Shown: positions 20,825-44,277, numbered from the whole stretch's first letter. The stretch: 63,893 nt of DNA, filler included, from Salisapilia sapeloensis CBS 127946 (GCA_023334545.1; 4 parts of 4 records of this genome joined end to end with filler, not necessarily neighbours in it), one strand, 5' to 3'. A program made the numbers and translations. The notes: generated by a model from the sequence alone, not told the origin.

Positions 20825-22714
20825 ATGATGTCGTTAATTGCAGATCCGAAATTGGACTCGTGGGACGCGGACACTGTAGATAGCACTTCAGCAGGCGAAG
20901 ACGATCTAGACGCCATGGATGGCCAAGCAATGATATTACCGAGATCTCGGTCCAGTCTCTCGAACAAAGGGGAGGAACTACCACTCCAGCCGACGTCACG
21001 ACGCAAGGATGGCTCGACACCCGTCTACCTTTACCTCCTCACTGTTTGCTCTGCACTAGGCGGATTTCTCTTCGGATACGATACTGTACCTATCTATCTT
21101 GTGTGCATACGGAAAAATATGATGACGAACGAATAAACGTAGGGAGTCATTTCGGGAGCGCTCGTTCTGTTGCGAAGTCCAGACTCGTTCAACCTGTCTG
21201 CAGTCCAAAGCGAAACGGTCGTATCTGCGGCAGTGTTCGGTGCCATCATTGGTGCGATCGCTAGTAGCTATGGAAACCACTTGTTGGGCAGACGTCCCGT
21301 CATTTTACTTTCCTCCTTCCTCTTCACACTTGGATCAATCCTCATGGGATTCGCTGCCAACTTTACTGCCCTGCTGTTTGGTAGGCTGATCGTTGGGTTT
21401 GCCATCGGTGCATCGTCCATGACTGGTACGCAAAATCATCCGATATCATCTACATATATGCTAACACAAGTGCTAGTTCCTTTATACATCGCCGAAGTCT
21501 CGCCTCCCGATATCCGGGGTACTCTTGTATCCGTAAACACTCTATTCCTAACCGGAGGTCAATTCTTTGCATCTCTCTTGGATGCTTTTCTAAGTGAAGT
21601 CCATGATGGATGGAGGTTCATGCTAGGAGCAGCAGCCATACCAGCTCTATTGCAGTTCCTAGGTTTCTTAGTTCTACCTGAAAGCCCCCGCTACCTCGTC
21701 AGCAAGTCTCACACGAGAGCTGCTCAAGATGCTTTGGCTCAAATTCGAGGCACAAGTGATATCGAGTCCGAGTTTCGACACATGGAGTCCGAAGTGCTGG
21801 AGCACAAACGAGAGTCTCGTGGTAGTATCCTAGAGGGATTGAAGGAACCTAGTGTACGTCGAGCCCTCATGCTCGGCTGCTCTCTTCAAGCTTTGCAGCA
21901 GGCTTGTGGCATCAATACTGTCATGTACTATGGCGCAACGATCGTCCAGCTAGCAGGCTTTGCCGATGCGTCTACAGCGATATGGCTATCCACACTAGTC
22001 GCCTTTAGCAACTTCATTTTCACCTTTGTAGGCATCTATCTTGTTGATCGACTTGGCCGACGCAGTCTCACATTGTGGAGTCTTGCAGGCGTTGTCATCA
22101 TGCTCACGTCTCTCGGTGCTTCTTTCTACATTGCAGACCACACGTCAGACGCTGTAACTAGCGTCGGCGATTGCAGTCGTATTTCGTCATGTTTCTCTTG
22201 TGCTGCTAGTGACCAATGTGGGCTATGCGCTCAGCCTTTGGATAGTGGTAGCGACAACTTCGTGTGTGCACCAGCTAGTGGTAGCAGTATGGATGGTACC
22301 TTTGGCGTCTGCAGCTCGAACGATTGGCATTTCCATGACTGTCCAACAGACAGCAAAGTCCCAGGCGTCTTCATTCTCATTGCGTTGTTCGTCTACTTGG
22401 CTGTCTTTGCCAGTGGCATGGGATGCATGCCCTGGACAGTCAACGCCGAGATCTACCCTCTCCACGCACGTAACTTTGCACTGAGCGCTGCAACGTCCGT
22501 GAACTGGATCACTAACCTTGTCGTCTCGTTCACTTTTCTCTCGGTCGTGCAAGAACTGTCACCGTCAGGTGCCTTTTGGCTGTATGCAGTCATCGCTCTT
22601 GCCGGATTCGTCTATTTGTTTGGAGCAATGCCAGAGACGAAAGGTTTGGAATTAGAGGAGATACAAGCACTTTTTGAACCGAAACAAAAGTATGTAGCCG
22701 TACGCCAGACATGA
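20825..22714 (+). CDS. MFS sugar porter, myo-inositol transporter (HMIT/INT-like), 3 exons
   Basis: LGGFLFGYDT|GVISGA, GRRPVI, VPLYIAEVSPPDIRG, PESPRYL, LQQACGINTVMYY, VDRLGRR, PETKGLELEEI. Cys-rich loop CSRISSCFSC...QCGLC is typical of inositol transporters. Introns 21086-21142 and 21426-21476. Confidence 0.88.
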
Positions 22715-23751: not shown

Positions 23752-23912
23752 CTTGTCGGTTTTTGCATCAATTTGTGTCCAAATGGTCGTTCTACCATCT
23801 TGTCCATCTACTTACTTTATATTTGTATACCGACGGTGGTTTTACCAACTTGAATGACGTTGACAAGACATCCGATGACATTTTCAGACACTTATTTTCT
23901 ACCTCCTGTACG

Positions 23913-25442
23913 ATGCAACTGACTTTTGAAAATGGAGATCAAGCTCCTGTGGCTATCATTACAGGTGCTGCGAGAGGGTTGGGTCGTGCTTGGTCCATCG
24001 CTCTTGCTTCCAGAGGCGTGCGAGTGGTGGTGAATGACAATGACAAGGATCAGACGCTCCTCCAGTCTCTCGTACGCGAGATCGAAGGGAAGGGAGGTAG
24101 TGCCGTCGCCGACTTCCACAGCGTTGAGGATGGAGAGAAGACTGTTGAGGCTGCGTATAAACAGTTTCGTCGCATCGATATCCTTATTAATGTAGAGTCT
24201 ATGCAGGATACATGTACAGCGTGCTCTTCTGACCTTTCGAGGTACAATGGTATAGAATGCAACGGTCATCCGGGACGGATCCTTCCGAAAGATGACAAAG
24301 GAATCATGGTAGTCTCTTGTTATATCGACGTACAATCTATCCGGTATGAGCGAAACGATAGGGACCAAGTCTATCGATCCAGTCTCTATGGAGCTTTTGT
24401 CATTTCTCGAGCGGTGTGGCCGATCATGCGAGAGCAAAAGTACGGACGCATCCTCAACTGCGTCTCCGGTGCCGGGCTCTATGGAAACTTTGGACAAGTC
24501 AATTACGCAGCGGCGAAAATGGGTCTCGTCGGCTTCACGACTGCACTGAACCGTGAAGGTACCTCGACTACATCTGATTCTGTCGCAAGATAGTCATCTA
24601 GTTGGTAGGGATCAAGTACAACATCCATGTAAACGCCATCTCTCCCGTTGCCGGCACTCGACTGACCGAGTCGGTGATGCCCACCGACGTGTGCCAAGCG
24701 CTGAAACCAGAGCTGACGTCCCCCATCGTCGTCTACCTTTGCCATCCGTCTTGTCCAGCCAACGGCGAGCTCTTTGAAGTAGTCTTCTCCTTGCATTCAT
24801 ACAGTAGGAAGATCGTGACGTATGGAGATAGATGGGTGGAGGATGGGTTGGGAAGCTACGAGTGCAGCGAACGCAAGGCGTCCGGTTCCCATCGAACTTC
24901 ACACCGGAAGTTGTGGCAGAGCACTGGCAAGACATTGTCGACTTTGGTCGCGTTACGCATCCGACGACGACGCAAGAATCTTTTGAACCGATCATGCGCA
25001 ACATAGCATCACCTCCATCCGTCGTCTCGACCTCCTCCTCGAGGCAGTGCGACGCAGTGTTCACCAAGCTGAGGCAGACGCTGCAGACGGAGCGAAAGCA
25101 GTGGGCTCGACAGATCAATGGCGTGATGGAGTGGCATGTGAGCAAAGAAGTGTGGACCATTGCTCTCCTGAAAGGCCAGGCGACTGTCGTGAAAGGCAAG
25201 GACGATCGGTACCCACCCGAGCTTCGTATCTACATTGATGAGCAAGATTTCTTGGATCTTGCGTCTGGCAAGATTCGACTGCAACAGGTACGTTCGATCG
25301 AATGAGATGCTCGATAGGACCTAACGTTCTTTTGCTCTAGGCCATGTGGGCGAAGAAGTTGCGTTTGGAAGGCAACTTGAAACTTGCGATGAAGCTCCAG
25401 CCGTTTGCTGATCTGCTGCAGAGCCCTCGCGCCAGATTGTAG
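23913..25442 (+). CDS. Peroxisomal D-3-hydroxyacyl-CoA dehydrogenase (SDR) fused to SCP2; MFE-2/HSD17B4-like without the hydratase domain; multi-exon
   Basis: TGAARGLG, VVVNDN, LYGNFGQVNYAAAKMG, NAISPVAGTRLTE, GGGWVGKLR; SCP2 domain WTIALLKG...IDEQDFLDLASG...LEGNLKLAMKL; ends in ARL* (PTS1). Confidence 0.85.
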
Positions 25443-27021
25443 TTGCAGAGACGTCAGTTGGGAAACATGAAACACGCAATCGGAAGATACTTTTACGTCT
25501 TTCTGCTACTGCTTTCGATCTCTTTCGTAGACTTGTGCTTTCGTGCTATATGATGAGTTACGAGGCAAGCGGGTCATCTGATCAATTGTAGATGTGGCTC
25601 CGATGACGCTAGTCGATGGCTGCTGATGCGTCCAGAGGGCTGACTCCGAGGCTGGTTGTCCCCACGATAGAAACGTCAGTGAACGGAAGGTTCGAAACAG
25701 ATCTGTTTAGACTTCACTTCGAATGTATAGACCAAGGCGGCGGTGAAGATCGATGGGAAGTGGAATGCATATCAGCGAAGAAATGAACTATCCGCACTTT
25801 GTTAACATGTATTAATAGAGAGTGTGGTAGCAACATGGATAGATTGACAATGGCACGTGAACGAGTATCGAGGGAAGACGATACAGAGGTCGAGGATGAC
25901 ACACATACACGATAGCACTACAGAAGAGTTTACATACAAATAGAGTCGACCAGAAATGATTTTTGAAGTAGCACAACCCCTATCATTCCCGTCAAGAGCT
26001 GCTCGCATCTCTGTAATTTGCTTCCTCGTCTTCAATGGTGACAGAGACGATGGGGCATAGTAGACGCCTGTGAAAAGCCTCCAGCAGGAGGTCAGACAGA
26101 AATTTAGCTGGCCAGGCCATACCAATGCTCGTTCGGTTGCCAACGTGAACGCATCCAGATGTCTACAGCTGATAGGATTCACTCGGTGCATCATGGCGTC
26201 TCAGCCTTTCTACAAACTCCACCACTATGGAGCTCCTGCATATCCATCGGGTTCTGAAACCCTTGATGGATACGTGATGTCACTAAGATGGTGAATAAGA
26301 TGTGATATTACGACAGGTCTCAGCGCAGCAGCGAATTAACGACCCTATGCAGATGTATGTACTTGACAAACACCGTGACAGATGGCCTCTGGACCGAACT
26401 TATTCAGTTCATTCTGCCCCTGCGCTACCATCCTCCGGATTTTCACACGCCAACTTACCATTCGTAACCAACCGAATAGCTTCCCGACTCATTCTGACTG
26501 TACACAAAGCCAGCTAACTCTTCGTACGACGAAGGTTGTGTGAACAGGTAATACTCGCCAAGGTGATTACTAGCGTGCAATAAGTCTACACATCATCAAA
26601 AGGTGCTGCCTGTGCAAGACCTGGACGACCACATGTGCGCTCCCAGTCGGCTTGCTGCTATCGCGCTTTGAAATACGCACGTAAGCTCTTACTCACTTCT
26701 AAATTGGCCGTTTCGGAGACACATCAACTTTTTCGACATCGATCATCGACTTTGCCGGATACACAAATACTTCTCGCCATTCCCTTGTAGCCGTTACAGG
26801 TGTTGCTTTCGCCACTGACCACCTGACGTAAAATTCTCTGGTGAACCATACCCATTACATTTGATTTCATGCTGGGCAATCGGCTCCCACCAAAATCCTA
26901 CCCAATATCGTCTTCGACTACCCCTGTCAAGCTACCACCACAGCAAAGTCTAGACGAACCATCGAAAACGCTTCAACAAGCTTTTCCGTCTACCATACGT
27001 CTGTGTGAACCTCAACGTGTC

Positions 27022-28371
27022 ATGGCGGACGAAATGGAAGGGTCACAAGGGACTTCGAGTTTACCAAAGTTTACCGAGTTACTGCGTCACCAGCGTCAGA
27101 ACGCAACTTCCTACTATATGGAAATACCTGCGTCAGCTCAATATGCACAATCGATCCCACCGTTGTCACAAGTACAACCAGAGGCGGAGCGATCACGCCC
27201 GTACCCAATGGATTGGCAAAGTGAACCTCAGCAACCTTCCTTCGCCTCTGACACTCCGATGGAAACGACTTCACCTTCTGCAATGGCTCGTTTAACAAAG
27301 CGAAAAGCAGATCGAGGTTCAACCTATGCAACTGACTCTCCCCATGACTCGACCGGGAGCAATCGTCAGCGAGCATCGAGGTACTTGAGCGACGACGATC
27401 GAGTGGACATCATCACTCGAATCAATGATGGAGAGAAACAAGTGAAGCTTGCGAAGGAGTACAACGTCAGCCGAGCTGCGATCTGCAACTTGTACAAGAT
27501 CCGAGATGCCGTCATGGCCAGGACAAGGAACGTGCAGACGAAAAAGCAGCGATTTGAGACACCATCAGCGAATGTATCGTCAATGAACGATTCAGACAGG
27601 TCCGCGGAGAATATCCACACGAACGATACTAGCGGCATGCAGACTGCTTTCTATACGAATACTACTGAAACTACCCCTCAAGCATACTCTGGAAGCCAGT
27701 CCTCACCCCCGATGGTCATGGAAATTTCGAAAGAGATCAAGGCACTACGAAACCTTCTTCCTGTTCTACGTGATGCCTGTACTCCCGTCGATACATACCA
27801 TCGGACAGCCGATCGAGTCGTTCGAATCCTACTTGAGAGCGTAATTGCTACCCTACCGTCTCGAGAACTGGAGCTAAAGACACCAGCAGGCGACGATCTA
27901 AGATGCGAGACTTCCTTTGCTGACCAAATGATCTGTGCTTTGACGATGGAGGAAGCCAATGCCAGTATTATACTTCCTCTCTTTGCTTCTCTACTACCTT
28001 CTGCACCCACAGGATCGATCATTCTTGCTCCACACCATCAAGGAGGTACGAACATCCACGCACAACATCCACCTCTATTACCATCCCAAGCAGTCTTTTT
28101 GCTCGACTCGAGCTGTGCAACAGGCAGAAGAGCATGTGCTGCACTCGACTACCTCGTACACGGGTGTTCTGTGGCAGCTAGTCGCATTTATTACATCACC
28201 ATCATTTCGAGCGAACAAGGACTTCAGCGCGTTTATCAAGCCCATCCAGACGTGAACTTGGTAACGGTGCAAATGGATGCTCGAGTCGATGAGCAGAACC
28301 AAATCCGACCAGGAATTGGCTACTTTGCTGAGCGGTATTTTGGACTAGGGTCGGGCGCAAGGCTAGTCTAG
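27022..28371 (+). CDS. HTH (CENP-B N-terminal/Psq-type) + degenerate UPRTase-like fusion protein, copy 1
   Basis: HTH RYLSDDDRVDIITRINDGEKQVKLAKEYNVSRAAICNLYK. PRT fold LRD...ADRVVRILLE...TPAG...VFLLDSSCATG...HPDVNLVT...IRPGIGYFAERYFG aligns with yeast Fur1-type UPRTase. Confidence 0.8.
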   Translation: MADEMEGSQGTSSLPKFTELLRHQRQNATSYYMEIPASAQYAQSIPPLSQVQPEAERSRPYPMDWQSEPQQPSFASDTPMETTSPSAMARLTKRKADRGSTYATDSPHDSTGSNRQRASRYLSDDDRVDIITRINDGEKQVKLAKEYNVSRAAICNLYKIRDAVMARTRNVQTKKQRFETPSANVSSMNDSDRSAENIHTNDTSGMQTAFYTNTTETTPQAYSGSQSSPPMVMEISKEIKALRNLLPVLRDACTPVDTYHRTADRVVRILLESVIATLPSRELELKTPAGDDLRCETSFADQMICALTMEEANASIILPLFASLLPSAPTGSIILAPHHQGGTNIHAQHPPLLPSQAVFLLDSSCATGRRACAALDYLVHGCSVAASRIYYITIISSEQGLQRVYQAHPDVNLVTVQMDARVDEQNQIRPGIGYFAERYFGLGSGARLV

Positions 28372-30498
28372 TCATAGAGTGGTAGACGTTTGAGTATATA
28401 CATAAAAGTCAAACTTGTCGACGTGAAATCGTGTTTTACATCGACAAATGTAAGCTTTGGTCATTGCTTTCGTAGAACTCATATGGTCTCTAGTTCTTAG
28501 CAAGTATTATTAATTGCCTCGATGGTCATGAAGCAGTTGAAGAGAGTTGGGTGAAGAGTAAAGAGATACCTAATGGACAGCAGAGCTTTTAAAATGCAGA
28601 AGCGACAGAATAGTACCTTTTACGAATCATATTAGATGCTTTTCAATACTGTTGATACGGACGGTCATGGCATTCGCATGAAATGTGCTATGGAAGGTTT
28701 CCAATTGTGTTGCGTAGGTTACTGAGCCATTGCCAATTGTGTATCAATGACATCGGATGCTATAAACCAATAGCTAGTTGTGATAGAGATATCAACATGG
28801 GAATATCCATGGCAATGTACTAAGAAACATAATCATTTCGCATATCAGAAGCATGAAGGAAATTAGAATCGAGATGCTATTCTCCTAGACAGTGTCGTGG
28901 CGAGATGGATAGTTCGTACGATCTACAGCTCTTTTCGTTCTTTTATGATCGCAGAATCCTTAAAGAGGAAATAGTCAAGGAATCAACTATATAGGTCGTA
29001 ATTCTGCTCTAGACCTCAAACTCAATACTGCTAGCAACTTTTTATCGCTTGAAAGTAGAGCTGATACTAGTACTCATCTATTTCTTGGTTTATTTTCTAC
29101 ATTGATTCAATCTAGATTATCATCATCACTGGAAGCAGACATAGAAGTTTGGAGTTGTCCAGGGGCAATATAATTCTCGCCTTTGTCGCAAAGGAAAGAG
29201 AGCTTATGCAGCACTTCTTTACAACGATTAATACTCAGTAGCCAGGTCTGAAGCTCGGCGGTCGTACTGGTAGCAAGGCAAAATTGAGTATATCACATAG
29301 CGTTGAAGAGATAGATATGCTTCTACTATAATGAAGATGCCAAAGTAGAAGAAATATCATATTCGTAGGATAAAAATCGCTTGTAAGGTCGATAGATCGA
29401 CGTCAAGCGTATTGCGAAGAATGCGAGCAGCAACATCGTTGATATATACATTCATGGCAATCACGCTAGCACAAAAGGCATATCTGACAGTGATGTTTAT
29501 AGCAGCAAATACCCAAACATTTAATGCATGGAGTTCAACGTGTTGGATTAAGACTATAAATGGAAACCTCTCATCAATGCCGTAAAATGGTCGGATTTTT
29601 AGCACCTACAGCGCTAATGACTATCCATATATCCACATCGAAGCCCCTTATTAACTTCACATGGCATGGAAAGATAGCAGTAGAGACCTTAGGCACTGTT
29701 CGGGCAACGCATTCTTCATCTCTTGAAGCCATGAAACCGGGAAGCTGAGAGATTTCCTAGCGGAAAAGATACTCATGCAAACATGCGAACACGATACTTG
29801 AGCAGAGAGCCGATCTAAGGCATATGGATGCAATCAGCTCCTCGGTGCTCTTGGGACGCTCCTCCTCGATTTGGGACTACCGTAGGATGAGCGGTTATCT
29901 TTAGGAATTGAAAGATCGCTGTGTTTCATTGTGAAAGACATGGTTCTTCAACGCCAAGTGTTCTTATAGAGTACGCATGAAAGTCCATGCAAGACGATGC
30001 CAAAGCTGCGCGACATCGCCTACAGGATCGACAAGAACGAGGGTCTAGATCATACTAAAGTTGATTGGAATGCGTCGACGATATTATAGAACTAGACCTA
30101 GCATCCTGTCGAACAAGTTTATATGATCGAAGGCGTACAATGCTACTCCTGAAAGTACATGCTCATAAAAGCCTTCAAATGCATAAGTACCGTATCATAG
30201 ATGTATCAACTCCTTCCTACTCCTTATCCTTCACAGTCTGGAAACTTCACACATTTTGTCATTATAATGGCTAACATGTCAACCACAACAGCTACTTGAG
30301 TACCCTCTCCACTCCATTCTACTCCACTCCACTCCTTCCTTCTCATAGACATCAATTCCCGGCCTTCAAGCTAGAAACACACCCACATTCCCTGCCGTAC
30401 CCATGTCGTAAGCTACCGAAATAAATACCAACCAAAAGATAAATTACGTTAATAAATTACGCCATACGAGCCAATCCTTCCACTAGCACCAAGTCACG

Positions 30499-31925
30499 AT
30501 GGCGGACGAGACCCCGATGACAACGGCTGAGCCGAATGCCAAGTATGACCTGACCAACACGTTGGCTCCATTCATGGACCTCCACTTCATGTTCCCACTC
30601 ATCGACTTCCTCTCGAGCAATGAATTGTATGACGAAGCACAGCTGATGGCTGCCAAGCTCTCGCTCCTCAAGCCGACCAACATGGCCGATTTTGCGGTCG
30701 AGATCTACCAGACGCTGCATAACACGACTGAAGCTCCTGCAGAGTTCGAGCAACGTCGTGGCGCGATTCTCGATGCACTCAGCCATGCCAAGAACGAGTG
30801 CCGACCGATGCTCGAGCTCATTGAGAACGAAGAGAAGATTGTCCAATTGCAGAACGATAACCAGCTCAATGGCCAGTACCTTGAGCAGCACGAAGGGGTA
30901 CATACGTCTCTATCGATTCTTACAACTAGTAGTCGCTTACATGTACATACTAGATTACACCGGCAGTTCTCGACGGACTGTACAAGTACGCCAAGCTCCA
31001 GTACGAGTGTGGCAACTACGAAGACTGCCTTACGTACCTCACGTACTATGGCGTGCTCATCCCGAACTCGTCGCAGCAATACTTGAACGCCTTGTGGGGA
31101 AAACTCGCGGCCGAGATCCTCATCTTCCGATGGGAAGACGCGTCCGCCGACATCTCGCGTATCAACGACGTCATTGACAACAACGTACATGCTCCTGCTT
31201 TTCCATGATAAAGATCGAAACTAATCTTAGACGTATAGAACATGATGACACCAGTGGAGCAGCTCCAGCAACGCACGTGGCTCTTGCACTGGTCGCTCTT
31301 CGTCTTCGCCTGGCACGAAGAAGGCCGAGACGCGGTCGTCGACTTTATGCTTCAGCCGCGTTGCGTCGAAGCCATCCAGAGCAACGCGCCGTGGCTACTT
31401 CGTTACCTGTGCGCCGGCGTCATCCTTCACAAGCGTCGTCGCGCGCTTACGAAAGACTTGCTCCGCATCCTCCGAGCGGACAAGGACAGCTATCAGGACC
31501 CTGTGCTAGACTTTGTTGATTGCCTCTTCGTTTCGTTTGACTTTGAGACTGCTCGTGAGAAGCTGCGCGAGTGTGAAGTCGTGCTCGTGAGTGACTTTTT
31601 CCTGTACGAGAAGAACATGGGGGAGTTTATGGAAGCTGCGCGACTTGCGATCTTTGAGCTCTACTGCCGCGTCCACACGACGGTCGACATGAAGCAGCTC
31701 GCCGACAAGCTTGCGATGCAGAACGAGCAGGCGACAGAACAGTGGGTCGTGAACATGATTCGACAGACCAAGCTGGACGCCAAGATTGACTCGCAAGAAG
31801 GACGTATCGTCATGGGCGCGCCGCACAACTCTGTCCATAGTGAAGTGATCGACAAGACGAGGGACTTGGCCGCCCGGACGTACAGTATGATGACGCAGCT
31901 CGACCGTTTGGGTAAACGCAAGTAA
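30499..31925 (+). CDS. EIF3E: Translation initiation factor 3 subunit E (eIF3e/INT6), 3 exons
   Basis: KYDLTNTLAPFMDLHFMFPLIDFL, KLSLLKPTNMADF, LQQRTWLLHWSLFVF, YQDPVLDF...SFDFETAREKL, PCI tail WVVNMIRQTKLDAKIDSQEG. Confidence 0.95.
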
Positions 31926-33518
31926 GTAGAGACCTAGTCAAGAAGCGAGCATGAATAAAACGAGGACATGGTCCATTTTGTTTGGTCAGCGTTGGGGTCG
32001 CGTCTTTTGTAGCAGGGTGGGAGAGTGGACACGTGACTTTGTTCGTGTGTTCTTTACAAGAAGTGTATCTTGCTGTTGATAGACGTAAAGAGCAGTAGCG
32101 TCTCGTTTAAAGTCTTCGATGTCAGAGTGATTGGTTTCCATGACAAACGTGCCGATTGCCGTGATGTGCTATCTGCAACAACCGTGGAGGTGAACATCGA
32201 AAGCTACTATGAAAGATCGACCAATGGGAATAGCTGCGTATGACTTAAATACACAGATTTTGCCTCTATAAACAGCTTGATATCCATGAGATGGATGATT
32301 CTTATCACGTAGAAACATAGACGCAGTACACGTTTAAAAAAAGTCATGTAATTTCTTGAAAAATCAGGATGCATCAGACTCGATTGATACAACATCGACA
32401 TACTCGATGGAATCTTTGCGGTTTATAAAGGGCACAAAGGATATGAGGAGAGAGTATGTCGACTAAATCGATAAAGAGTGTGGTCGTGGATGCAAGCGAT
32501 AAGGTTGAGCAACGGAGCTCTAAGTACTGACAAAATTGCATTTGCAACATACAACGAGCTATTGTAACTGCACTTACTGCTTTCGTAGGCTGATTCTCTA
32601 CGTGTGCATGCTATTCGCACTCGTGGTGATTAGATTTGCTCTAGTCATTCGAAAGAGAGTATTTATTTCACTTTTCGTTTCCTAATTCTTTCCCTCGTCC
32701 ATGTGTTTGTCTTACTATCGTGCAATCCAGCAGCATTTTAAGGGCAGATAGACGACCAGTAGCCCATCACCTCAAAGTTTCCAGATTTCTTCGTTTCTTT
32801 ACACCCACACGGGCTACAGATCGAATATTCTAGGACAAAGTTTCTGCAACTTGCTCTATGAAACATGACGGCGAAAGTGATCAGTCGAAACGTTCGGTAG
32901 TGTCGCGGATACCCTCCTTTTCACCTTTGGAGATATGCTAGCTTGGCTTATCAACAAGAAACCTGTACATGATAGAAATGACTAGCTCGATTGCCTCGCA
33001 TAGAAATGCTCCCATCAGCTCACTCGTATCACGCCATCCCGTTTTTGTTCGAAATGTCTCGAAAAGTATGTCCTGTTTAGAGGCAGAATAGTAAGACAGT
33101 ACATAATGATTTCGTGCTGTCAATCGAACAGCATGGCTTCCTGCTCTCGCACTTCCTTTTTTTAAATGAAAATAAAACCACTACTTCCAATCACTTGATG
33201 CTCTTTATAACCTCCGCTATCAACTAAATATCCTCTTTATTCAGCTCGACGCGTTGCTAATCTGACATATAGAAACAACTAGGAAACGAAAAGAACTTGG
33301 GTGTATAGAACACGCATCGTGTCGAACGACGGATCACAGGCACGACCAACCACCTGTACAAACCCAGGAGAACACAAAAGCGAACTGTTTCAAATCTCGC
33401 CATCGCACTGCCTTTTTCCTCGGCCTCGATCCACTCGCCTGCCATCGGCTTCGACCTACCTTCATACAAGCATCCAAAGCCTTCCAACGAAGCTACTCGA
33501 TTATTACTTTGCCATTTG

Positions 33519-34670
33519 ATGGGTACTACAAAAGTAGATACGAGCGCCGTGCACGACACGGCAACTGCAAGTCGCCGTGGACCTACCACTCGGTCCTCCC
33601 AGCAACTTCGTGCGGCCCGGTCCGCCGCGAGGAATGTCATTGTGGACTTGAACGCAGAAGACTGCTCGGTTCACTCGTCCAACCTCACACCACCTCCGAG
33701 CGAGGCATCTGCTCCTGCAACCATTGCCGACGACAACAGCAATCAGCGTTCGTCGAGATACCTTCGGGAGTCTGATCGGCGAAACATCATCTTGCGCATC
33801 CAGAATGGAGAGCGTCAGTCTGCACTCGCGAAGGAGTATGGCGTGACGCGTGCTGCGATCTGTCACATCAATAAGAAGCGTGTTGAAATCCTTTCGCGGT
33901 CCCATCGTGATGACGTATATGCAAATGCTCGGCACCCAAAGAGACGAATCTACATTACGCCAGAAGAGATGAAAGACCAACACATCTACCCAGTCGTGTC
34001 GGAAGTCAAATCTCCTGCGCTGAATTTGCTGCTGACGAAATTACGATCCAAGCACACATCCAGTGCCGAGTACCGACTTACCACCAACCGCCTCTTTCGT
34101 ATGCTATTGGAACAAGCGCTCGTGCTCGCACCCACAGATGCCGTGAATGTGTTGACACCAGCCGGGTGTGCGTGGAAAGGACTACAACCGCGGCATGCCA
34201 CTGTCGGCGTCGGGATCAATGAAGCTGGACTGCTGCTACTGGACGTCTTCCGAGCGGTCCAACCAGAGAGTACCGCTGGATCCATCACTATCAAGGAAAA
34301 GTCTGATCAGAATGGCATGCCAGCATCATTCGTTAAATGTGCCTGTGTCCCGCATAACCTCCAGCTTACCAGCATCTTCCTACTGGAAGCCACAACCGCC
34401 AACTCAGACAGCATCTGCACGACCATCCAGACGTTGCTGGACTTTGGTGCCACAGAGACGTCCATCTTCTTTGTGTGCCTCGTATCCAGCCACGCCAGTA
34501 TTTCGGCCATTTGCAACCGGTATCCTGCGGTGCGCATCGTCACGGCTTCCATCGACTCGGACTCGAGCGAGACTAAAGAGATTTCGCCTGGTATTGGCAT
34601 CTTCCTCGAGCGGTACTTGAACATGACGACAATGCATCAAAGTGACTTCGGACCGGCAGTCTGCATATAA
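33519..34670 (+). CDS. HTH (CENP-B N-terminal/Psq-type) + degenerate UPRTase-like fusion protein, copy 2
   Basis: HTH RYLRESDRRNIILRIQNGERQSALAKEYGVTRAAICHINK. PRT fold LLTKLR...RLFRMLLEQAL...TPAG...IFLLEATTANSDS...YPAVRIVTASID...ISPGIGIFLERY. Confidence 0.8.
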   Translation: MGTTKVDTSAVHDTATASRRGPTTRSSQQLRAARSAARNVIVDLNAEDCSVHSSNLTPPPSEASAPATIADDNSNQRSSRYLRESDRRNIILRIQNGERQSALAKEYGVTRAAICHINKKRVEILSRSHRDDVYANARHPKRRIYITPEEMKDQHIYPVVSEVKSPALNLLLTKLRSKHTSSAEYRLTTNRLFRMLLEQALVLAPTDAVNVLTPAGCAWKGLQPRHATVGVGINEAGLLLLDVFRAVQPESTAGSITIKEKSDQNGMPASFVKCACVPHNLQLTSIFLLEATTANSDSICTTIQTLLDFGATETSIFFVCLVSSHASISAICNRYPAVRIVTASIDSDSSETKEISPGIGIFLERYLNMTTMHQSDFGPAVCI

Positions 34671-36473
34671 GCGACAGAAGTAGCCATCGGGACCTTTGAT
34701 TTGCTTCATGAGATACGAGAGTAGGACGAGAAACTATAGTGGGTATTGCTTATGTGGTCGTAAATGAATATAAACAGACTTCTTGTGCATGTCACTTGTT
34801 AATCAAAAATGATGCTGCAGGATAGATAGAGTGTTGTCATGACGTCGTGAGTGGTCATGTAGGCGGGACGAGGATACGTATGAGCATGAATCTATGCTCG
34901 TAGAGTTTCTCGTACAGATACTATATAGCCATGCGGGGCATACTGGCGTGTGCATACCTTTCATAGCAATGCAAATGCTCACAAGGAGTACTGTCTAGTG
35001 ATTAGATTTAACGTTCCTCGTGCCAATGCGTGTAGGAGGTTCATGTATCAGCTCAATTAAGCGCTGCAATCCAGCTCGTCCATGTAGATAGACTACCCCA
35101 TCATGATACAAGTAATCTGCAAAGTTGCATCGTAGGAAAGATAGTGGCCTAAAAATATTAAAATGCTTGTACATTGTGTAAGCACTTTGTATCGACGCTG
35201 ATGTAGGACGTCAGTGGAGATACTACACGACGTCGAAACTTTACGCGGCTGGTGCATTCGCCGAAGATAACTCGTGAAGTTGGAGAAGTAGGTAATGAGG
35301 TCTGAATGAGCAATCTTTGCTGTACAAGAAGCAGGCTCAAGTCGTTTAGTGATGGATGGATATGATTTTCACCTCGACAACCTATCGTTGCTACGCCATT
35401 CTAGTGGGAATGACTGTTGCACATGATATTGTATATGTTGCCTGGTGTAATTCTCCCACGATATGCTTGCATTGGCATTCATGCTACGTGCTGTGGAAGG
35501 TTGGGAATGAGGTTTCGATAAATAGCAACAACATTTAGCTTTACTCATCTATAAATAGTAGTGAATTGATATGAAGCCACTGCAATCGTCTTTCGCCACC
35601 ACTGCTCTTCCTTTTGTCTTTGCTGAACCTCTGGAGGCGATGTACATTTGCAAGCTATAAGCTAGACTGCAAATTAATCTACAAGGACCTGGTTTCTAGT
35701 AACGCATGGGAGTGATAGTCTTCGAAATCTCATCCTTTATGCAAGCCTTGAAGCCCGCGTCAAGAACCTCTACCTTCCAGAAGGGTCGGGTTCAGCTAAT
35801 GTACGCCGATAGAATTTTTCGCTTCAATTTCGAGCAGATCAGGCAGGAGGTAGCCATAGAATTTACTTGATGCCATCTGCAGAAGATCATGATGCAAAAA
35901 ATCCTGGTGTTCATTTCGGTGCACAGTATGATAGATGCTAACAAGAATTCTTTTGTGCAGGACAGATAATGCTTCGGTTTCCTAGCTTTATAAGGCACCA
36001 AGTCGGAAGTTTATCCGTGTACCTCATTCTAAGGTTGCCCCAGTAGCTCGAACGAAAACATCTTTCGTCCACTAGCGCAACATGCATTCCATTCAAACTA
36101 AATCGTAAAATTGAACCTACAGGATGGGAAAACACCGCAGACAACACTTTATCATCGACCATCTCGATAGATGCAAACGCAAGGCGATATGTTGACAAGG
36201 CATTAACCAACTCTACTTTCATCTCCATAACCGTGTTTAAATCAATTCGACATTGTTTCTTTTTGCATAAATCCTTCTACTCGAGCACTCGTTTTATGGG
36301 TACCGTTTATCTTCAAAGAATTCCTTTACGCATACCCAAGTCTCTCTCACGAGCAATTGATGCGTGAGACAAAGACACCAGGCTATGCTTTTAGTAAGTG
36401 CAAAATTCAGCCAGCAAATTCATGTAGTGTGCACGTCACTATCACTCTTTCCCACACCACACAAGCCAAAAGG

Positions 36474-37169
36474 ATGCCGTTGTTATCAAGAAAGAAATGC
36501 CATACTCGACAAACACCGTGCTTTGCCATGGTCTGCGTGAACAATGTCAACCGCAGTATGGCAGCACACGCGCTACTCCAAGATCATGGCCTTTGTGTTC
36601 GGTCCTTTGGATGCAATCATCGAGTCTGCTACCCATGTCGACCTGGCGCGAGACCACTCTCATTTCCATTCTCGTCCAGCTATTCGTTCATGGCAAAACA
36701 GTTGCATAAGAGTGATGAAGAAACATTTAAGCGATGTGGTGTTTTTGAAATGCTCGAACGCAATGCTGCCGTGAAAGACCGTCCAGAGCGATGGCAGGAT
36801 CAGCGATATCGAGAATTAAAAGAGCTGGATGTTGCCATCTGCTTTGATAAAAATGCTTATATCGCTGTTCTCCAAGGTATGTCGATCTGTTGGATGACTT
36901 TGCGATCATTTATAAACCATTTAGTAGACTTGCAATGGAAGAGGAAGCTGAGGTTGCACGCCAAGAAGCATCCACTACAGGTACTGTGTATGGACACGGA
37001 CGATACTGCTATTGGCGCTGATGACGCTAGTAAATTGGCTCTGGAATTGTGCCAAGAGCTACATGCGCATGGAGTCTCTGGTTTAGCGAATCCAAAAGCC
37101 AAAGACTTGATGACCGCTTTCAAGGCACACCAAGGGATCAATTTAGACTGCGCTGTTATATACGTTTAA
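36474..37169 (+). CDS. SSU72: Divergent Ssu72-like RNA Pol II CTD phosphatase, 2 exons
   Basis: VCVNNVNRSMAAH (CX5R), VRSFG, MLERNAAVKDRPERWQ, LDVAICFD, CMDTDD...LALELCQ. 51-nt intron 36877-36927. Confidence 0.8.
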   Translation: MPLLSRKKCHTRQTPCFAMVCVNNVNRSMAAHALLQDHGLCVRSFGCNHRVCYPCRPGARPLSFPFSSSYSFMAKQLHKSDEETFKRCGVFEMLERNAAVKDRPERWQDQRYRELKELDVAICFDKNAYIAVLQGMSICWMTLRSFINHLVDLQWKRKLRLHAKKHPLQVLCMDTDDTAIGADDASKLALELCQELHAHGVSGLANPKAKDLMTAFKAHQGINLDCAVIYV

Positions 37170-39275: not shown

Positions 39276-40394
39276 CTAAATATATGGTGTGGTGGCCGTC
39301 TCTCGATTCGACTGGGACGTATTCGATCCGAATGAGACTGCTGGAGCTTCATACGTAAAGCCAGTGAACATACTTTTCGGCATCCCACTCGCACTACTTC
39401 CAATGCTTTTGCTTGCAGGTGTCCCGTTCACTGGCATTTCCGTAAACTCTTTTTCAAAATTCGACGTATCTCCATTTTCTTTCGACTGCGGATCCGACGG
39501 TTTGAATGGTGGTTCAGACCACAAGAGACCGTCCCAGTCTACGTGACGAAAGAACGGATGCTTCTTCACGTCTGCCGCTCCGTGGGTACTACCCAGTCGT
39601 TGGACAGGATCTCGATGCAACAGTCCAGTGATGAGCGACGCAGCTTCGGAGCTGAGGTAGGACGGAATCTCCAACGGAGCTTCCCGAATCTTCACAAAGA
39701 GCTCCTGTCGATTGCGAGTGTACCATGGAGGGAGTCCAGTAAGCATCTCGTACAAAACCATGCCCATGCCCCACCAGTCGACGCTCGTGCCGTAGTTCTT
39801 TCTAGCTAAAATCTCTGGTGCCAAGTACTCTGGCGTCCCACATAGAGATGTCGCGCCACTGTCGACCTCTGTCACTTCGTCCTTGGCCAGTCCAAAGTCT
39901 GCTAGCTTGACATGCCCCAATTCGTCGAGTAAAATGTTTTCCGGCTTCAAGTCTCGATAGACGACGCCAAGCGAGTGCAAGTGTTCGAGCGCTAACACGA
40001 GTTCCGCAGCGTAGAAGCGTGTGAGCGGTTCATCAAATTTGCCTAGTCGCGAGAGGTGAAAGAAGAGTTCACCGCCGGGACAATAGTCCAGGACAAAGTA
40101 TAGTTTCTTTGGTGTCTGGAAAGCGTAGTGGAGTCCGACGATGAACGGGTGACTTGCGACGCCAAGCACTCGGCGCTCTGTCTTGGTGTGTTCCACCTGC
40201 TTTCGCTTGAGCAGTTGGGACTTTGTGAGTATTTTCATGGCAAAGATCTTGGAGTTTGTTTTCTTCCGCACGAGTGTGACCTTCCCGAAGGACCCTTTTC
40301 CGATCACTCGAATGAGCGCAAAGTCTTCAAGCGAGACTTTGTCATCCAGAGTGGATTGGTCGACCATATTAGCCAGCTCATCGGTGTCCGGCAT
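39276..40394 (-). CDS. AGC-family Ser/Thr kinase (Akt/SGK/S6K-like) without a PH domain
   Basis: GKGSFGKV, AMKIL, YRDLKPEN, DFG, LCGTPEYLAPE; C-terminal NFEKEFT turn motif and FTGFTY hydrophobic motif. Confidence 0.92.
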   Translation of the reverse strand: MPDTDELANMVDQSTLDDKVSLEDFALIRVIGKGSFGKVTLVRKKTNSKIFAMKILTKSQLLKRKQVEHTKTERRVLGVASHPFIVGLHYAFQTPKKLYFVLDYCPGGELFFHLSRLGKFDEPLTRFYAAELVLALEHLHSLGVVYRDLKPENILLDELGHVKLADFGLAKDEVTEVDSGATSLCGTPEYLAPEILARKNYGTSVDWWGMGMVLYEMLTGLPPWYTRNRQELFVKIREAPLEIPSYLSSEAASLITGLLHRDPVQRLGSTHGAADVKKHPFFRHVDWDGLLWSEPPFKPSDPQSKENGDTSNFEKEFTEMPVNGTPASKSIGSSASGMPKSMFTGFTYEAPAVSFGSNTSQSNRETATTPYI

Positions 40395-41368
40395 GATGAC
40401 AAGATTTCGGACGTGAACGCAGCACGAGTTGATTGGAACTGAAGCTTGATGGCCGTCCTCGCCTGCTTATTGTTATCTGTCGAGAAACAGGACTTGATAG
40501 GCATTTGCAACGCTACGAGAGCGACAGGGATTGGAGTAAAATGTGACAATGAACAACAGGATTGGTGGAAAAGTCGCATCGGTTGTGAAGTTGTGCCTGT
40601 GCACATTTGCAAGGGTAGCGGAGAAAGCACATGAAGAGATACCAATGCACTGGTAGCAGCGTTTGACATTTGTACGTGCATGGTTTGGCTATGTGAGATG
40701 AGGTTGAACTTGCTACACTGGACTGGAATGCATTCGAGATATCCAGTGAGATATCCACTCGAATTGACAGTCTCTGCACTGATGGTTGACAGTGAATCTG
40801 TGATGGCAGAGGGGAGTGGATAGTAGCATGAGTACTAGACGTAAAAGTTGGAAGCATTGCGTTTTTCAAATCTCAATGCATAAAGGGTTTCATGTGGCTT
40901 AATTCAATGCTTCATTGACAGGTGTCGACTGACAAAGTTGCTTCGCAGAGAATGTAGTCAGCAGCATCTTCGACAAGTAGGTTGACGAAAATGTATTCCT
41001 ACTAATCTTTGTCTGCAAAGCTACTATTCACACTAGGTCGACCCCAGCACAAGTAACAGCCCATTCTAGTCTAGATAAAGGCAGGAGCTACACAGCCTCA
41101 ACTCTTGTTAAACCTATAAATCTCGTATCCATACCGTCTGAGTCATAGATCTAAGCAGCTTTAATAAACGGTAGAAGAAAGCACACAAATACTACGCTGC
41201 ACCCATCTACTACCTTATCCAGCTTATTACTATTCACCTCGTAAACTATTCGTATCGCCCACATCGGTCTGGCATTCCTTGAACTACTTAGCCGAACCTC
41301 CTTCCTACCTATACTCACGCTACACTCGAGCTACAGCAGGGCATTTTATAAAACACACGACAAAAAAA

Positions 41369-44090: not shown

Positions 44091-44277
44091 ATCTTCTTGT
44101 CTTGCTTTTGGAAAGTGAATACAATTGTCAAGTACACGACGATCTTGGGGTTTCATTCTCAACTTCAATAGACATGTCTCTAGTTTCAATAGAAGAGCAG
44201 AGTGGCGGTTCAATTAGACCTTGTATTTTGTACGTATAAAACAGAGAAAATGTATGGAAAAGTGCAGACAAATAAAC

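What the first reader, a model, noticed from the sequence alone, without database searches (positions are those of the whole stretch)
27022..34670. Linked pair of HTH + pseudo-UPRTase proteins: candidate eukaryotic nucleotide-sensing transcription regulators
Seen: two intronless, same-strand genes on one contig (27022-28371, 33519-34670), each with a CENP-B/Psq-type HTH upstream of a full UPRTase-fold domain. Compared with yeast Fur1-type motifs, catalytic and ligand residues are lost in both. SIVRAG becomes TMEEAN / GINEAG (PRPP Arg lost). LLDPMLATGGS becomes LLDSSCATGRR / LLEATTANSDS. PGLGDFGDRY becomes PGIGYFAERY / PGIGIFLERY (uracil-site Asp lost). Established: PRT folds are reused as ligand sensors in bacterial regulators (Bacillus PurR = HTH + PRT; PyrR = UPRTase-like), and inactive UPRT domains occur in eukaryotes. 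Inference: these are DNA-binding pseudoenzymes coupling nucleotide/PRPP status to transcription, independently derived in oomycetes. Automated pipelines would label them simply 'UPRTase'. I know of no functional description, but cannot exclude one.
Basis: partly seen in the sequence, partly recalled or inferred. Interest (0 to 1): 0.85.

Follow-up and report, generated by a model that had tools for sequence, protein, structure and literature searches.

The report
Oomycete DNA-binding proteins with dead UPRT domain
Two expressed genes of an oomycete each join a small DNA-binding helix-turn-helix to a copy of the uracil-salvage enzyme UPRT that has lost its catalytic residues. They belong to a large oomycete-only family, two of whose members are already known to bind the DNA motif GTTAAC, so they are probably gene regulators with an enzyme-derived control domain.

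Summary
Both ORFs (27022-28371 and 33519-34670, + strand) are uninterrupted. Gene 2 is covered by one unspliced RNA contig in each of four RNA runs, and gene 1 is about 93% covered.

Each protein has:
- a psq/CENP-B_N-type three-helix HTH;
- a full UPRT fold (Pfam 1e-30 and 2e-33; TM 0.84-0.91 to T. gondii and C. albicans UPRT).

The catalytic and PRPP residues are replaced: R112→E/E, R137→P/K, D235→Y/I.

They are ancient paralogues (28% identity) in separate clades of a large family:
- 217 representatives score E≤1e-30;
- every named member is an oomycete.

The HTH is 68-82% identical within clades, against 35-45% for the UPRT-like part.

That paper never mentions the UPRT domain.

Pocket elements are not decaying freely. 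In gene 2's clade the substitutions are themselves conserved (Arg→Glu 11/12, Asp→Asn 8/12). In gene 1's clade the 5'-phosphate loop is the best-conserved element.

Best reading: sequence-specific DNA-binding regulators with a catalytically dead UPRT effector/oligomerisation domain. Ligand sensing is plausible but untested. The gene linkage is not conserved.

The parts
27022..28371 (+). Gene 1 (449 aa from ATG 27022; the frame is open from ATG 26869, giving 500 aa). HTH + UPRT-like protein of clade B ('VSRAAICNLYK' type).
   Evidence: ORF. Pfam. 92-94% of the sampled words of 26700-28600 are held in 4 RNA runs. Clade placement.
27358..27561 (+). Gene 1 psq/CENP-B_N-type HTH segment (aa 113-180; SRYLSDDDRVDIITRINDGEKQVKLAKEYNVSRAAICNLYKIR).
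   Evidence: The HTH is 68% identical to clade members, against 35% for the UPRT-like part.
27739..28344 (+). Gene 1 UPRT-like domain (aa 240-441).
   Evidence: PF14681 at 1.3e-30. T. gondii UPRT at 1.4e-23.
27943..27960 (+). Gene 1 TMEEAN, the equivalent of SIVRAG. The PRPP-binding Arg (T. gondii R112 / M. tuberculosis R77) is replaced by Glu.
   Evidence: Residue role from PMC3570474.
28099..28131 (+). Gene 1 PRPP/5'-phosphate loop LLDSSCATGRR. Asp, Thr and Gly are kept; Pro is lost.
   Evidence: In clade B the counts are D 22/25, C 23/25, T 20/25 and G 25/25, the most conserved element of the domain.
28309..28338 (+). Gene 1 uracil 'hood' PGIGYFAERY. The catalytic Asp (T. gondii D235) is replaced by Tyr.
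   Evidence: Residue roles from PMC10970046 and PMC3570474.
33519..34670 (+). Gene 2 (383 aa). HTH + UPRT-like protein, basal in clade A ('GVTRAAICHINK' type).
   Evidence: ORF. One unspliced RNA contig per run: 33339-34890, 33388-34785, 33374-34779 and 33243-34783. Clade placement.
33735..33938 (+). Gene 2 psq/CENP-B_N-type HTH segment (aa 73-140). AF2 helices at aa 84-95, 100-107, 111-119 and 121-127.
   Evidence: The helix-3 stretch VTRAAICHINK is identical to that of PITG_12841, whose fragment binds GTTAAC.
34008..34616 (+). Gene 2 UPRT-like domain (aa 164-366).
   Evidence: PF14681 at 1.8e-33. AF2 pLDDT about 97. Foldseek TM 0.84-0.91 and rmsd 1.6-2.4 A to T. gondii UPRT and C. albicans Fur1.
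34212..34229 (+). Gene 2 GINEAG, the equivalent of SIVRAG. Arg is replaced by Glu, and Glu stands there in 11 of 12 clade A members.
34380..34412 (+). Gene 2 degenerate PRPP loop LLEATTANSDS (D→E, P→A, T→N, and the following Ala-Gly of T. gondii's loop → Ser-Asp).
34587..34616 (+). Gene 2 hood PGIGIFLERY. The catalytic Asp is replaced by Ile; most clade A members have Asn there (8/12).

Best explanation
Genes 1 and 2 encode sequence-specific DNA-binding proteins of an oomycete-wide multigene family.

An N-terminal disordered region is followed by a psq/CENP-B_N-type three-helix HTH that reads DNA. For gene 2 the site is most likely a (T)GTTAAC(A)-like one. A flexible linker joins the HTH to a complete UPRT fold that can no longer make UMP.

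The dead UPRT fold works as the regulatory half. It holds the protein in the dimer or oligomer typical of UPRTs, so that two HTHs can read a palindromic site. In at least part of the family it still binds a small phosphoribosyl or pyrimidine-type ligand that modulates DNA binding or oligomerisation. This works like Firmicute PurR without being related to it.

Shown:
- the architecture, and for gene 2 its presence on one mRNA;
- the fold;
- loss of the catalytic residues;
- the distribution of the family;
- much stronger constraint on the HTH than on the UPRT-like part;
- DNA binding by the isolated HTH fragments of two P. infestans members (published).

Inferred:
- absence of enzyme activity;
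- oligomerisation through the UPRT fold;
- ligand sensing. I put this at about 0.4 overall. It is more likely for gene 1, whose 5'-phosphate loop is intact, than for gene 2, the most degenerate member of its clade.
For: Architecture and expression.

HTH type: a profile hit to the psq domain 2elh at E = 9e-4; an AF2 model whose best fold hits are 2elh and the CENP-B/DNA complex 1hlv, TMq 0.65-0.67; source names 'HTH psq-type domain-containing protein' for orthologues.

Family size and range:
- 217 representatives at E<=1e-30, and the top 150 are all family members.
- The HTH signature is found 136 times in them.
- About 20 of the 30 representatives looked up carry an organism name, and every one is an oomycete: Phytophthora, Pythium, Globisporangium, Lagenidium, Albugo.
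- 12 ESM Atlas clusters are all Oomycota.

Constraint: HTH 68-82% identity, UPRT-like 35-45%, N-terminus 17-24%.

Experimental DNA binding: the fragments of PITG_12840 and PITG_12841 carry this family's HTH, and their top 8-mers are (T)GTTAAC(A) (PMC11267843). P0058 shows that the PITG_12840 fragment continues into a UPRT-like domain.

Fold: TM 0.84-0.91 to UPRTs, against only 0.55-0.59 to PyrR.

Dead active site: R112→E/E, R137→P/K, P165→S/A, D235→Y/I. Residue roles come from PMC3570474 and PMC10970046.

The pocket is not decaying freely. In clade A, Glu stands at position 112 in 11/12 members, Asn at 235 in 8/12, and PGxGNFxERY is conserved. In clade B the D-x-x-C-x-T-G loop is 80-100% conserved against a domain mean of 50%.
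Against: No assay of activity, ligand binding, oligomeric state or DNA binding exists for these two proteins.

The published PBM fragments lacked the UPRT-like domain and were GST fusions, so the palindromic motif does not prove UPRT-mediated dimerisation.

Gene 2 deviates from its own clade at the pocket (Ile at 235; N-S-D in the phosphate loop), which argues against ligand binding in that protein.

More than half of the family lacks the C-terminal hood altogether (gaps in 91 of 158 at D235), although some of those are fragmentary gene models.

Conservation of the phosphate loop could be structural (a strand-loop-helix core of every type I PRT).

GTTAAC is not enriched in the window: 2 sites against 4.8 expected.
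Confidence: 0.6

Rival explanations
1. The UPRT-like domain is only a structural dimerisation or tetramerisation scaffold. The proteins are ordinary constitutive HTH transcription factors and no small molecule is involved.
For: Only two positions of the UPRT-like part are nearly invariant family-wide, R191 and E198 of gene 2, both in the N-terminal helix. Both PRPP arginines are gone in almost all members, and the hood is missing in many. Gene 2's pocket is the most degenerate of its clade. The isolated HTH fragments bind DNA specifically without the domain.
Against: The replaced pocket residues are conserved within clades (Glu 11/12, Asn 8/12). The 5'-phosphate loop is the best-conserved element of clade B, with Gly in 25/25. 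That is hard to explain for a mere scaffold. Asp→Asn at a general-base position is the classic enzyme-to-binder change.
Confidence: 0.28
2. The proteins act on chromatin rather than as gene-specific regulators, like CENP-B or other domesticated transposase-derived HTH proteins (centromere, repeat or heterochromatin binding). The UPRT fold would be an interaction platform.
For: The HTH is of the CENP-B_N/psq type, which derives from pogo-like transposases in other lineages (established knowledge; fold hit 1hlv). The family is expanded and often tandemly arrayed: four consecutively numbered Albugo candida proteins on one contig (CCI42813-16), consecutively numbered PITG_12840/41, and double-module proteins P0002 and P0009.
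Against: No transposase (DDE) domain is present, and there is no repeat character in the window, which holds only two copies. Both genes are expressed single-copy genes. The P. infestans study reports that the GTTAAC/GTTTAAC motifs are not enriched at centromeres.
Confidence: 0.08
3. They are still enzymes, either UPRTases or phosphoribosyltransferases with another substrate, that merely carry an extra N-terminal domain, as automatic annotation implies.
For: Strong Pfam UPRTase matches and an intact fold. Gene 1 keeps Asp164, Thr169 and Gly170 of the PRPP loop. Animal UPRT homologues with a deviant uracil site may still act in vivo (PMC4536494).
Against: Both genes lack the Arg pair assigned to PRPP binding and catalysis, and the catalytic Asp. 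The catalytically important Pro of the PRPP site is also replaced (the Pro's importance is taken from the title of a paper cited in PMC3570474). The family as a whole never has Arg at position 112. Selection is far stronger on the HTH than on the 'enzyme'.
Confidence: 0.04

Closest known systems
Phytophthora infestans 'CENPB'-class transcription factors PITG_12840 and PITG_12841 (PMC11267843)
   Same: Same family. The HTH signature is near-identical (RYL..DR..I..RI..GEKQ..LA.E.GVTRAAICHI.K.R), and the tested fragments run into the start of the same UPRT-like domain. P0058 shows the full HTH + UPRT-like architecture. Their HTH fragments bind (T)GTTAAC(A).
   Different: They belong to another paralogue clade ('ICHIKK/ICHINK' Phytophthora group). 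That clade keeps the hood Asp (PGFGDF) but loses Asp164. The paper treats them purely as HTH proteins and does not mention the UPRT domain.
Eukaryotic uracil phosphoribosyltransferase (T. gondii UPRT, yeast/Candida Fur1; PF14681)
   Same: The UPRT-like domain has the same fold: TM 0.84-0.91, rmsd 1.6-2.4 A, 25-30% identity. It is closest to the eukaryotic enzymes by sequence.
   Different: The Arg112, Arg137, Pro165 and Asp235 equivalents are replaced, and an N-terminal HTH is added. The domain evolves fast (35-45% identity within clades).
Firmicute PurR (winged-helix + inactive PRT effector domain; PMC8789054)
   Same: Same logic. A DNA-binding domain is fused N-terminally to a type I PRT fold that lacks enzyme activity and serves as the effector and oligomerisation domain.
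   Different: Independent origin. The PRT part is UPRT-type, not purine-PRT-type. The HTH is psq/CENP-B_N, not the PurR winged helix PF09182. The host is eukaryotic. PRPP is an unlikely ligand because the pyrophosphate-binding arginines are lost.
Bacterial PyrR
   Same: A UPRT-related PRT fold re-used as a pyrimidine-responsive regulator.
   Different: PyrR binds RNA with the PRT fold itself, keeps weak UPRTase activity and has no HTH. Structurally it is a distant match only (TM 0.55-0.59).
Animal UPRT homologues (human UPRT, Drosophila krishah; PMC4536494)
   Same: Eukaryotic UPRT-family proteins with an altered uracil site and doubtful catalytic activity.
   Different: The animal proteins keep the PRPP site and the four active-site regions and have no DNA-binding domain.

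Membership tests
UPRTase (PF14681; EC 2.4.2.9) | Sequence match above Pfam's gathering score, and a UPRT fold | tested here: met
   106.8 and 116.2 bits against a cut-off of 27. Foldseek TM 0.84-0.91 to solved UPRTs.
UPRTase (PF14681; EC 2.4.2.9) | PRPP-binding/catalytic arginines (M. tuberculosis R77 and R102 = T. gondii R112 and R137) | tested here: not met
   Gene 1: Glu and Pro. Gene 2: Glu and Lys. Across the family Arg never stands at 112 and stands at 137 in only 7 of 158. Residue roles from PMC3570474.
UPRTase (PF14681; EC 2.4.2.9) | Catalytic/uracil-site Asp of the GD(F/A)GD motif (T. gondii D235, B. caldolyticus D200) | tested here: not met
   Tyr in gene 1 and Ile in gene 2. Residue roles.
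UPRTase (PF14681; EC 2.4.2.9) | PRPP loop D-P-x-x-A-T-[GA]-G-S | tested here: inconclusive
   Gene 1 keeps D, A, T and G but has Ser for Pro and Arg-Arg at the end. Gene 2 keeps only the Ala and the final Ser, and has a conservative Glu for the Asp.
UPRTase (PF14681; EC 2.4.2.9) | UMP formation from uracil + PRPP | not testable with these tools
   Needs an enzyme assay or fur1/upp complementation.
psq / CENP-B_N type HTH (PF04218, PROSITE HTH psq-type) | Profile match above the curated threshold | tested here: not met
   CENP-B_N scores 15.8 and 16.3 bits against a cut-off of 21.2. Orthologues do carry PF04218 or the name 'HTH psq-type' in source annotation.
psq / CENP-B_N type HTH (PF04218, PROSITE HTH psq-type) | Three-helix HTH fold resembling solved psq/CENP-B domains | tested here: met
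   The family profile hits 2elh at E = 9e-4. The AF2 core has pLDDT above 90, and its top fold hits are 2elh and 1hlv (TMq 0.65-0.67, rmsd 1.9 A to 1hlv). The Foldseek E-values are weak (0.07-0.13), as expected for about 55 residues.
psq / CENP-B_N type HTH (PF04218, PROSITE HTH psq-type) | Sequence-specific DNA binding | not testable with these tools
   Published PBM data exist for two paralogues from another species, not for these proteins.
Oomycete HTH + UPRT-like family (contains PITG_12840 and PITG_12841) | Signature HTH block followed by a UPRT-like domain in one polypeptide | tested here: met
   Both genes carry the block and the domain. Each falls inside a family clade.
Firmicute PurR | N-terminal PurR winged-helix domain (PF09182) and a purine-PRT-like effector domain | tested here: not met
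   No PF09182 hit at E<=1. The effector domain is UPRT-type. The resemblance is in logic only.
PyrR | PyrR-type PRT fold that binds RNA | tested here: not met
   PyrR structures match at only TM 0.55-0.59 and 13-15% identity, far below UPRTs.

The most novel reading that the evidence does not exclude
Oomycetes evolved their own class of metabolite-gated transcription factors by fusing a psq-type HTH to a UPRT made catalytically inactive. The dead active site still binds a pyrimidine or phosphoribosyl metabolite (for example UMP or UTP, or a base in the Asn-containing hood). It couples nucleotide status to binding at GTTAAC-type promoter sites through ligand-dependent oligomerisation. This would be a eukaryotic, independently derived counterpart of bacterial PurR, diversified into five or more paralogue clades with different ligand pockets.
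Probability: 0.3. Interest if true: 0.8.

Novelty: new variant of a known kind. Interest (0 to 1): 0.6.

Why it matters
Direct small-molecule control of eukaryotic transcription factors through enzyme-derived domains is rare. Oomycete gene regulation is also poorly understood, although the group includes major crop and animal pathogens.

This family is large, lineage-specific and expressed, and a DNA motif is already known for two members. The missing half of the story is what the dead UPRT domain does, and that can be tested directly with standard biochemistry.

There is also an annotation point. Members are variously filed as 'uracil phosphoribosyltransferase', which overstates pyrimidine-salvage capacity in metabolic reconstructions, or as 'CENPB' TFs, which hides the enzyme-derived domain.

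Tried and rejected
- An exact-sequence look-up of gene 2's product found nothing. The genome's proteins are not in the collection, and the best representative identities are only 38% for gene 1 and 46% for gene 2.
- The word-indexed homologue searches were insensitive for this family, finding 8 and 12 hits. The exhaustive profile search was what revealed its size.
- Conserved linkage of the two genes: rejected. The gene-2 orthologues of Globisporangium splendens and Lagenidium giganteum share neighbours with each other, but have neither a second family member nor an eIF3e gene within 10 kb.
- Recent tandem duplication: rejected. The two genes are 28% identical and sit in different clades.
- GTTAAC or GTTAACA enrichment in the window: none, 2 sites against 4.8 expected.
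- The AFDB cluster search added nothing on taxonomy, because the organism column was blank.
- The T. gondii UPRT structure papers are not held. Residue roles were therefore taken from PMC3570474 and PMC10970046, and the GTP site could not be mapped.
- Literature searches for the architecture found no description of the UPRT-like domain in these proteins. The term sets were UPRT + oomycete + HTH, UPRTase + Phytophthora, the PITG ids, and pseudoenzyme + PRT + DNA-binding.

Full report
**1. The observation**

Both reading frames are present and uninterrupted on the + strand.
- Gene 1 runs 27022-28371 and encodes 449 aa. Its frame is already open from an upstream ATG at 26869, which would give 500 aa.
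- Gene 2 runs 33519-34670 and encodes 383 aa.

Pfam gives strong UPRTase (PF14681) matches: 1.3e-30 over aa 240-441 of gene 1 and 1.8e-33 over aa 164-366 of gene 2. HTH models match only below threshold: CENP-B_N 0.011 and 0.0077, HTH_23 0.004, HTH_7 0.013.

The two proteins are 28% identical over 334 aligned residues, HTH and UPRT part included.

**2. Transcripts**

The four runs that hold the locus behave as RNA.
- The eIF3e-like gene between the two genes (30476-31987) is covered by contigs that skip two GT..AG introns (30897-30952 and 31185-31238).
- Most of the DNA between the genes has zero depth.

Gene 2 is covered in every run by one contig without any joint: 33339-34890, 33388-34785, 33374-34779 and 33243-34783. 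Its depth is 53-82, against 128-385 for eIF3e.

For gene 1 only the index result is available. Between 92% and 94% of the sampled words of 26700-28600 are present in four RNA runs of the same organism. This means it is expressed and essentially continuous, but its 5' end and start codon remain open.

**3. Organism**

An intronless AGC kinase in the window (39276-40394, - strand) compares as follows:

| Organism | Identity |
|---|---|
| Globisporangium | 82-83% |
| Peronosclerospora | 82% |
| Pythium oligandrum | 79% |
| Aphanomyces | 77% |
| Saprolegnia | 67-75% |

The window therefore comes from an oomycete whose proteins are not in the searched collections.

**4. The HTH**

An alignment of nine relatives showed a nearly invariant block, SRYLRExDRRxIIxRIxxGEKQxxLAKEFGVTRAAICHINKxR. 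The rest of the alignment varies.

A 53-sequence profile of this block hits the solved psq/CENP-B_N domain of Drosophila distal antenna (2elh) at E = 9e-4.

An AF2 model of the block has a core pLDDT above 90 and four short helices. Its two best fold matches are 2elh and human CENP-B bound to DNA (1hlv), with TMq 0.65-0.67 and rmsd 1.9 A over 54 columns to 1hlv. The Foldseek E-values are weak (0.07-0.13), as expected for a domain of about 55 residues.

Several orthologues are named 'HTH psq-type domain-containing protein' by UniProt.

**5. The UPRT-like domain**

In the full-length AF2 model of gene 2 (130-sequence alignment, mean pLDDT 81.6):
- residues 1-80 and 130-158 are disordered;
- the HTH (aa 84-127) has pLDDT above 93;
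- residues 160-375 have pLDDT about 97.

Foldseek places the domain on UPRT proper:

| Structure | TM | Other |
|---|---|---|
| T. gondii UPRT (1jlr, 1upu, 1jls) | 0.84-0.88 | rmsd 1.6-2.4 A, 30% identity |
| C. albicans Fur1 (7rh8) | 0.91 | 25% identity |
| PyrR | 0.55-0.59 | 13-15% identity |

Residue roles come from two papers.
- 5-fluorouracil in T. gondii UPRT contacts M166, A168, Y227, Y228, I229, G234, D235 and F236 (PMC10970046).
- In M. tuberculosis UPRT, Arg77 and Arg102 are assigned to PRPP binding, and Arg102 and Asp198 to catalysis. Asp198 is the equivalent of B. caldolyticus Asp200, the proposed catalytic carboxylate (PMC3570474).
- That paper also cites a study whose title names the conserved Pro of the PRPP site as catalytically important.

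By spacing and motif these correspond to T. gondii R112 (SIVRAG), R137 (QRDE), D235 (GDFGD) and P165. The pairwise HMMER alignments then give:

| T. gondii residue | Gene 1 | Gene 2 |
|---|---|---|
| R112 | Glu | Glu |
| R137 | Pro | Lys |
| D164 | Asp | Glu |
| P165 | Ser | Ala |
| T169 | Thr | Asn |
| A170 | Gly | Ser |
| D235 | Tyr | Ile |
| D238 | Glu | Glu |

G234, F236, R239 and Y240 are kept in both. Loss of activity itself is an inference.

**6. The family**

A profile search of 1.84 billion representatives found 217 proteins at E<=1e-30, and all of the best 150 are HTH + UPRT-like proteins. The HTH signature occurs 136 times among them.

Thirty representatives were looked up. About 20 carry an organism name, and every one is an oomycete:
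- several Phytophthora species;
- Pythium oligandrum and [Pythium] brassicae;
- Globisporangium splendens and, from the first search, G. polare;
- Lagenidium giganteum;
- Albugo laibachii and A. candida.

Their names are 'hypothetical', 'HTH psq-type domain-containing', 'Phosphoribosyltransferase domain-containing' or plain 'Uracil phosphoribosyltransferase' (for example P. infestans KAF4029338.1). The ESM Atlas holds 12 related clusters of 50 or more members, all Oomycota.

A FastTree of 151 sequences shows several old paralogue clades.
- Gene 1 lies in the 'VSRAAICNLYK' clade, with Albugo and P. infestans members.
- Gene 2 is basal in the 'GVTRAAICHINK' clade, with Lagenidium, Globisporangium and P. 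oligandrum.

So the two linked genes are ancient paralogues, not a recent tandem pair. The gene-2 orthologues of G. splendens and L. giganteum have no second member or eIF3e gene within 10 kb.

Tandem or fused copies do recur elsewhere:
- double-module proteins P0002 and P0009;
- four consecutively numbered A. candida proteins on one contig;
- the consecutively numbered PITG_12840 and PITG_12841.

**7. Selection**

Identity within clades, by region:

| Region | Identity |
|---|---|
| HTH | 68-82% |
| UPRT-like domain | 35-45% |
| N-terminal region | 17-24% |

Family-wide, Arg never occupies position 112. Arg stands at 137 in 7 of 158 sequences, and the hood is absent or unaligned in 91 of 158.

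Within clades, however, the pocket is not drifting freely.
- In gene 2's clade, position 112 is Glu in 11 of 12 members and position 235 is Asn in 8 of 12. PGxGNFxERY is well conserved.
- In gene 1's clade the 5'-phosphate loop [VI]LLLD-x-x-C-x-T-G is the most conserved part of the domain: D 22/25, C 23/25, T 20/25 and G 25/25, against a mean top-residue frequency of 0.50.

Gene 2 is itself the outlier of its clade, with Ile at 235 and N-S-D in the loop.

**8. Published function**

A protein-binding-microarray study of P. infestans transcription factors (PMC11267843) lists PITG_12840 and PITG_12841 as 'CENPB' family TFs. The tested fragments carry exactly this family's HTH and stop at the first helix of the UPRT-like domain. 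Their top twenty 8-mers centre on (T)GTTAAC(A).

The authors note that the GTTAAC and GTTTAAC motifs are palindromic and not enriched at centromeres.

The words uracil, UPRT and phosphoribosyl do not occur in the main text. P0058 contains the PITG_12840 fragment followed by a UPRT-like domain.

DNA binding is therefore experimentally shown for two family members, but the UPRT-like half has not been described. Gene 2's helix-3 stretch VTRAAICHINK is identical to that of PITG_12841. I therefore infer a similar site for gene 2; gene 1 (VSRAAICNLYK) may differ. In the window GTTAAC occurs twice against 4.8 expected, so nothing can be learned locally.

**9. Mechanism**

Most likely these are sequence-specific DNA-binding regulators in which the dead UPRT fold is the effector and oligomerisation module.

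UPRTs are oligomeric. M. tuberculosis UPRT shows a monomer-tetramer equilibrium, and T. gondii UPRT is stabilised as a tetramer by GTP (PMC3570474). A dimeric fold carrying two flexibly tethered HTHs fits a palindromic site.

The clade-specific conserved substitutions and the conserved phosphate loop suggest retained binding of a ribose-5-phosphate-containing or pyrimidine ligand in part of the family. PRPP itself is unlikely, because the pyrophosphate-binding arginines are replaced, in one clade by a conserved Glu.

The logic parallels Firmicute PurR, whose inactive PRT domain binds PRPP and (p)ppGpp to control DNA binding (PMC8789054). The origin is independent: a different HTH and a different PRT subfamily.

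The rivals are a pure scaffold, a chromatin or CENP-B-like role, and a residual enzyme. They are weighed in their own sections.

**10. Verdict**

The DNA-binding pseudoenzyme part is well supported and, for DNA binding, already shown in relatives. The nucleotide-sensing part is plausible, with probability about 0.3-0.4, and untested. The 'linked pair' has no special significance.

In novelty terms this is a new variant of a known kind, an enzyme-derived effector domain on a transcription factor. It is lineage-specific, and the relevant half is undescribed in the literature I could search.

Noticed in passing
window 30476-31987 (+): eIF3 subunit e-like gene (PCI domain) lying between the two genes. 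It has two short GT..AG introns (30897-30952 and 31185-31238), confirmed by spliced RNA contigs in four runs.
   Followed up: partly
window 29512-29936: A short transcribed segment (contigs of 307-425 nt, depth 5-36) between gene 1 and the eIF3e gene. It has no long ORF on the + strand; an 82-aa ORF at 29357-29605 lies on the - strand. Its nature is unknown.
   Followed up: no
window 32428-32607 and 32870-33163: Low-depth RNA contigs upstream of gene 2, present in some runs only. In run X4 the gene-2 contig starts as early as 33243. This could mean variable 5' ends or separate small transcripts.
   Followed up: no
window 25800-25807: A perfect palindrome TGTTAACA, matching the published motif of PITG_12840/41. 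It lies about 1.07 kb upstream of the first in-frame ATG of gene 1 (26869). It is one of only two GTTAAC sites in the window, fewer than chance expects, so no weight is placed on it.
   Followed up: partly
gene 2 aa 136-142 (window about 33924-33944) and family alignment A3: A short basic motif A[KR]HPK[KR] recurs just after the HTH in many members of several clades (consensus '...PxAKHPK...'; ARHPKRR in gene 2). It could be a nuclear localisation signal or a DNA-contacting arm. It is absent from gene 1.
   Followed up: no
P0002 (Pythium oligandrum, 616 aa), P0009 (760 aa), Albugo candida CCI42813-CCI42816: Elsewhere the family occurs as double-module proteins (HTH-UPRT-HTH-UPRT in one polypeptide). 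It also occurs as four consecutively numbered, near-identical (>=90%) genes on one Albugo contig. This hints at frequent tandem duplication and possibly at paired modules working together.
   Followed up: partly
window 17278-46250: Neighbouring genes by Pfam: cation efflux transporter (18577-19824, -), sugar/MFS transporter (21170-22714, +), short-chain dehydrogenase (23763-24593, +), Ssu72 phosphatase (36357-37169, +), AGC kinase (39276-40394, -) and a PHD/ePHD-finger protein (41279-42928, +). Two long ORFs have no Pfam match: 43179-44213 (-), and 44453 to the edge of the piece (+).
   Followed up: no
runs X7-X9 (organism B): RNA runs of a second organism hold 5-8% of the words of the gene-1 stretch. 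A related species probably shares a short near-identical part.
   Followed up: no
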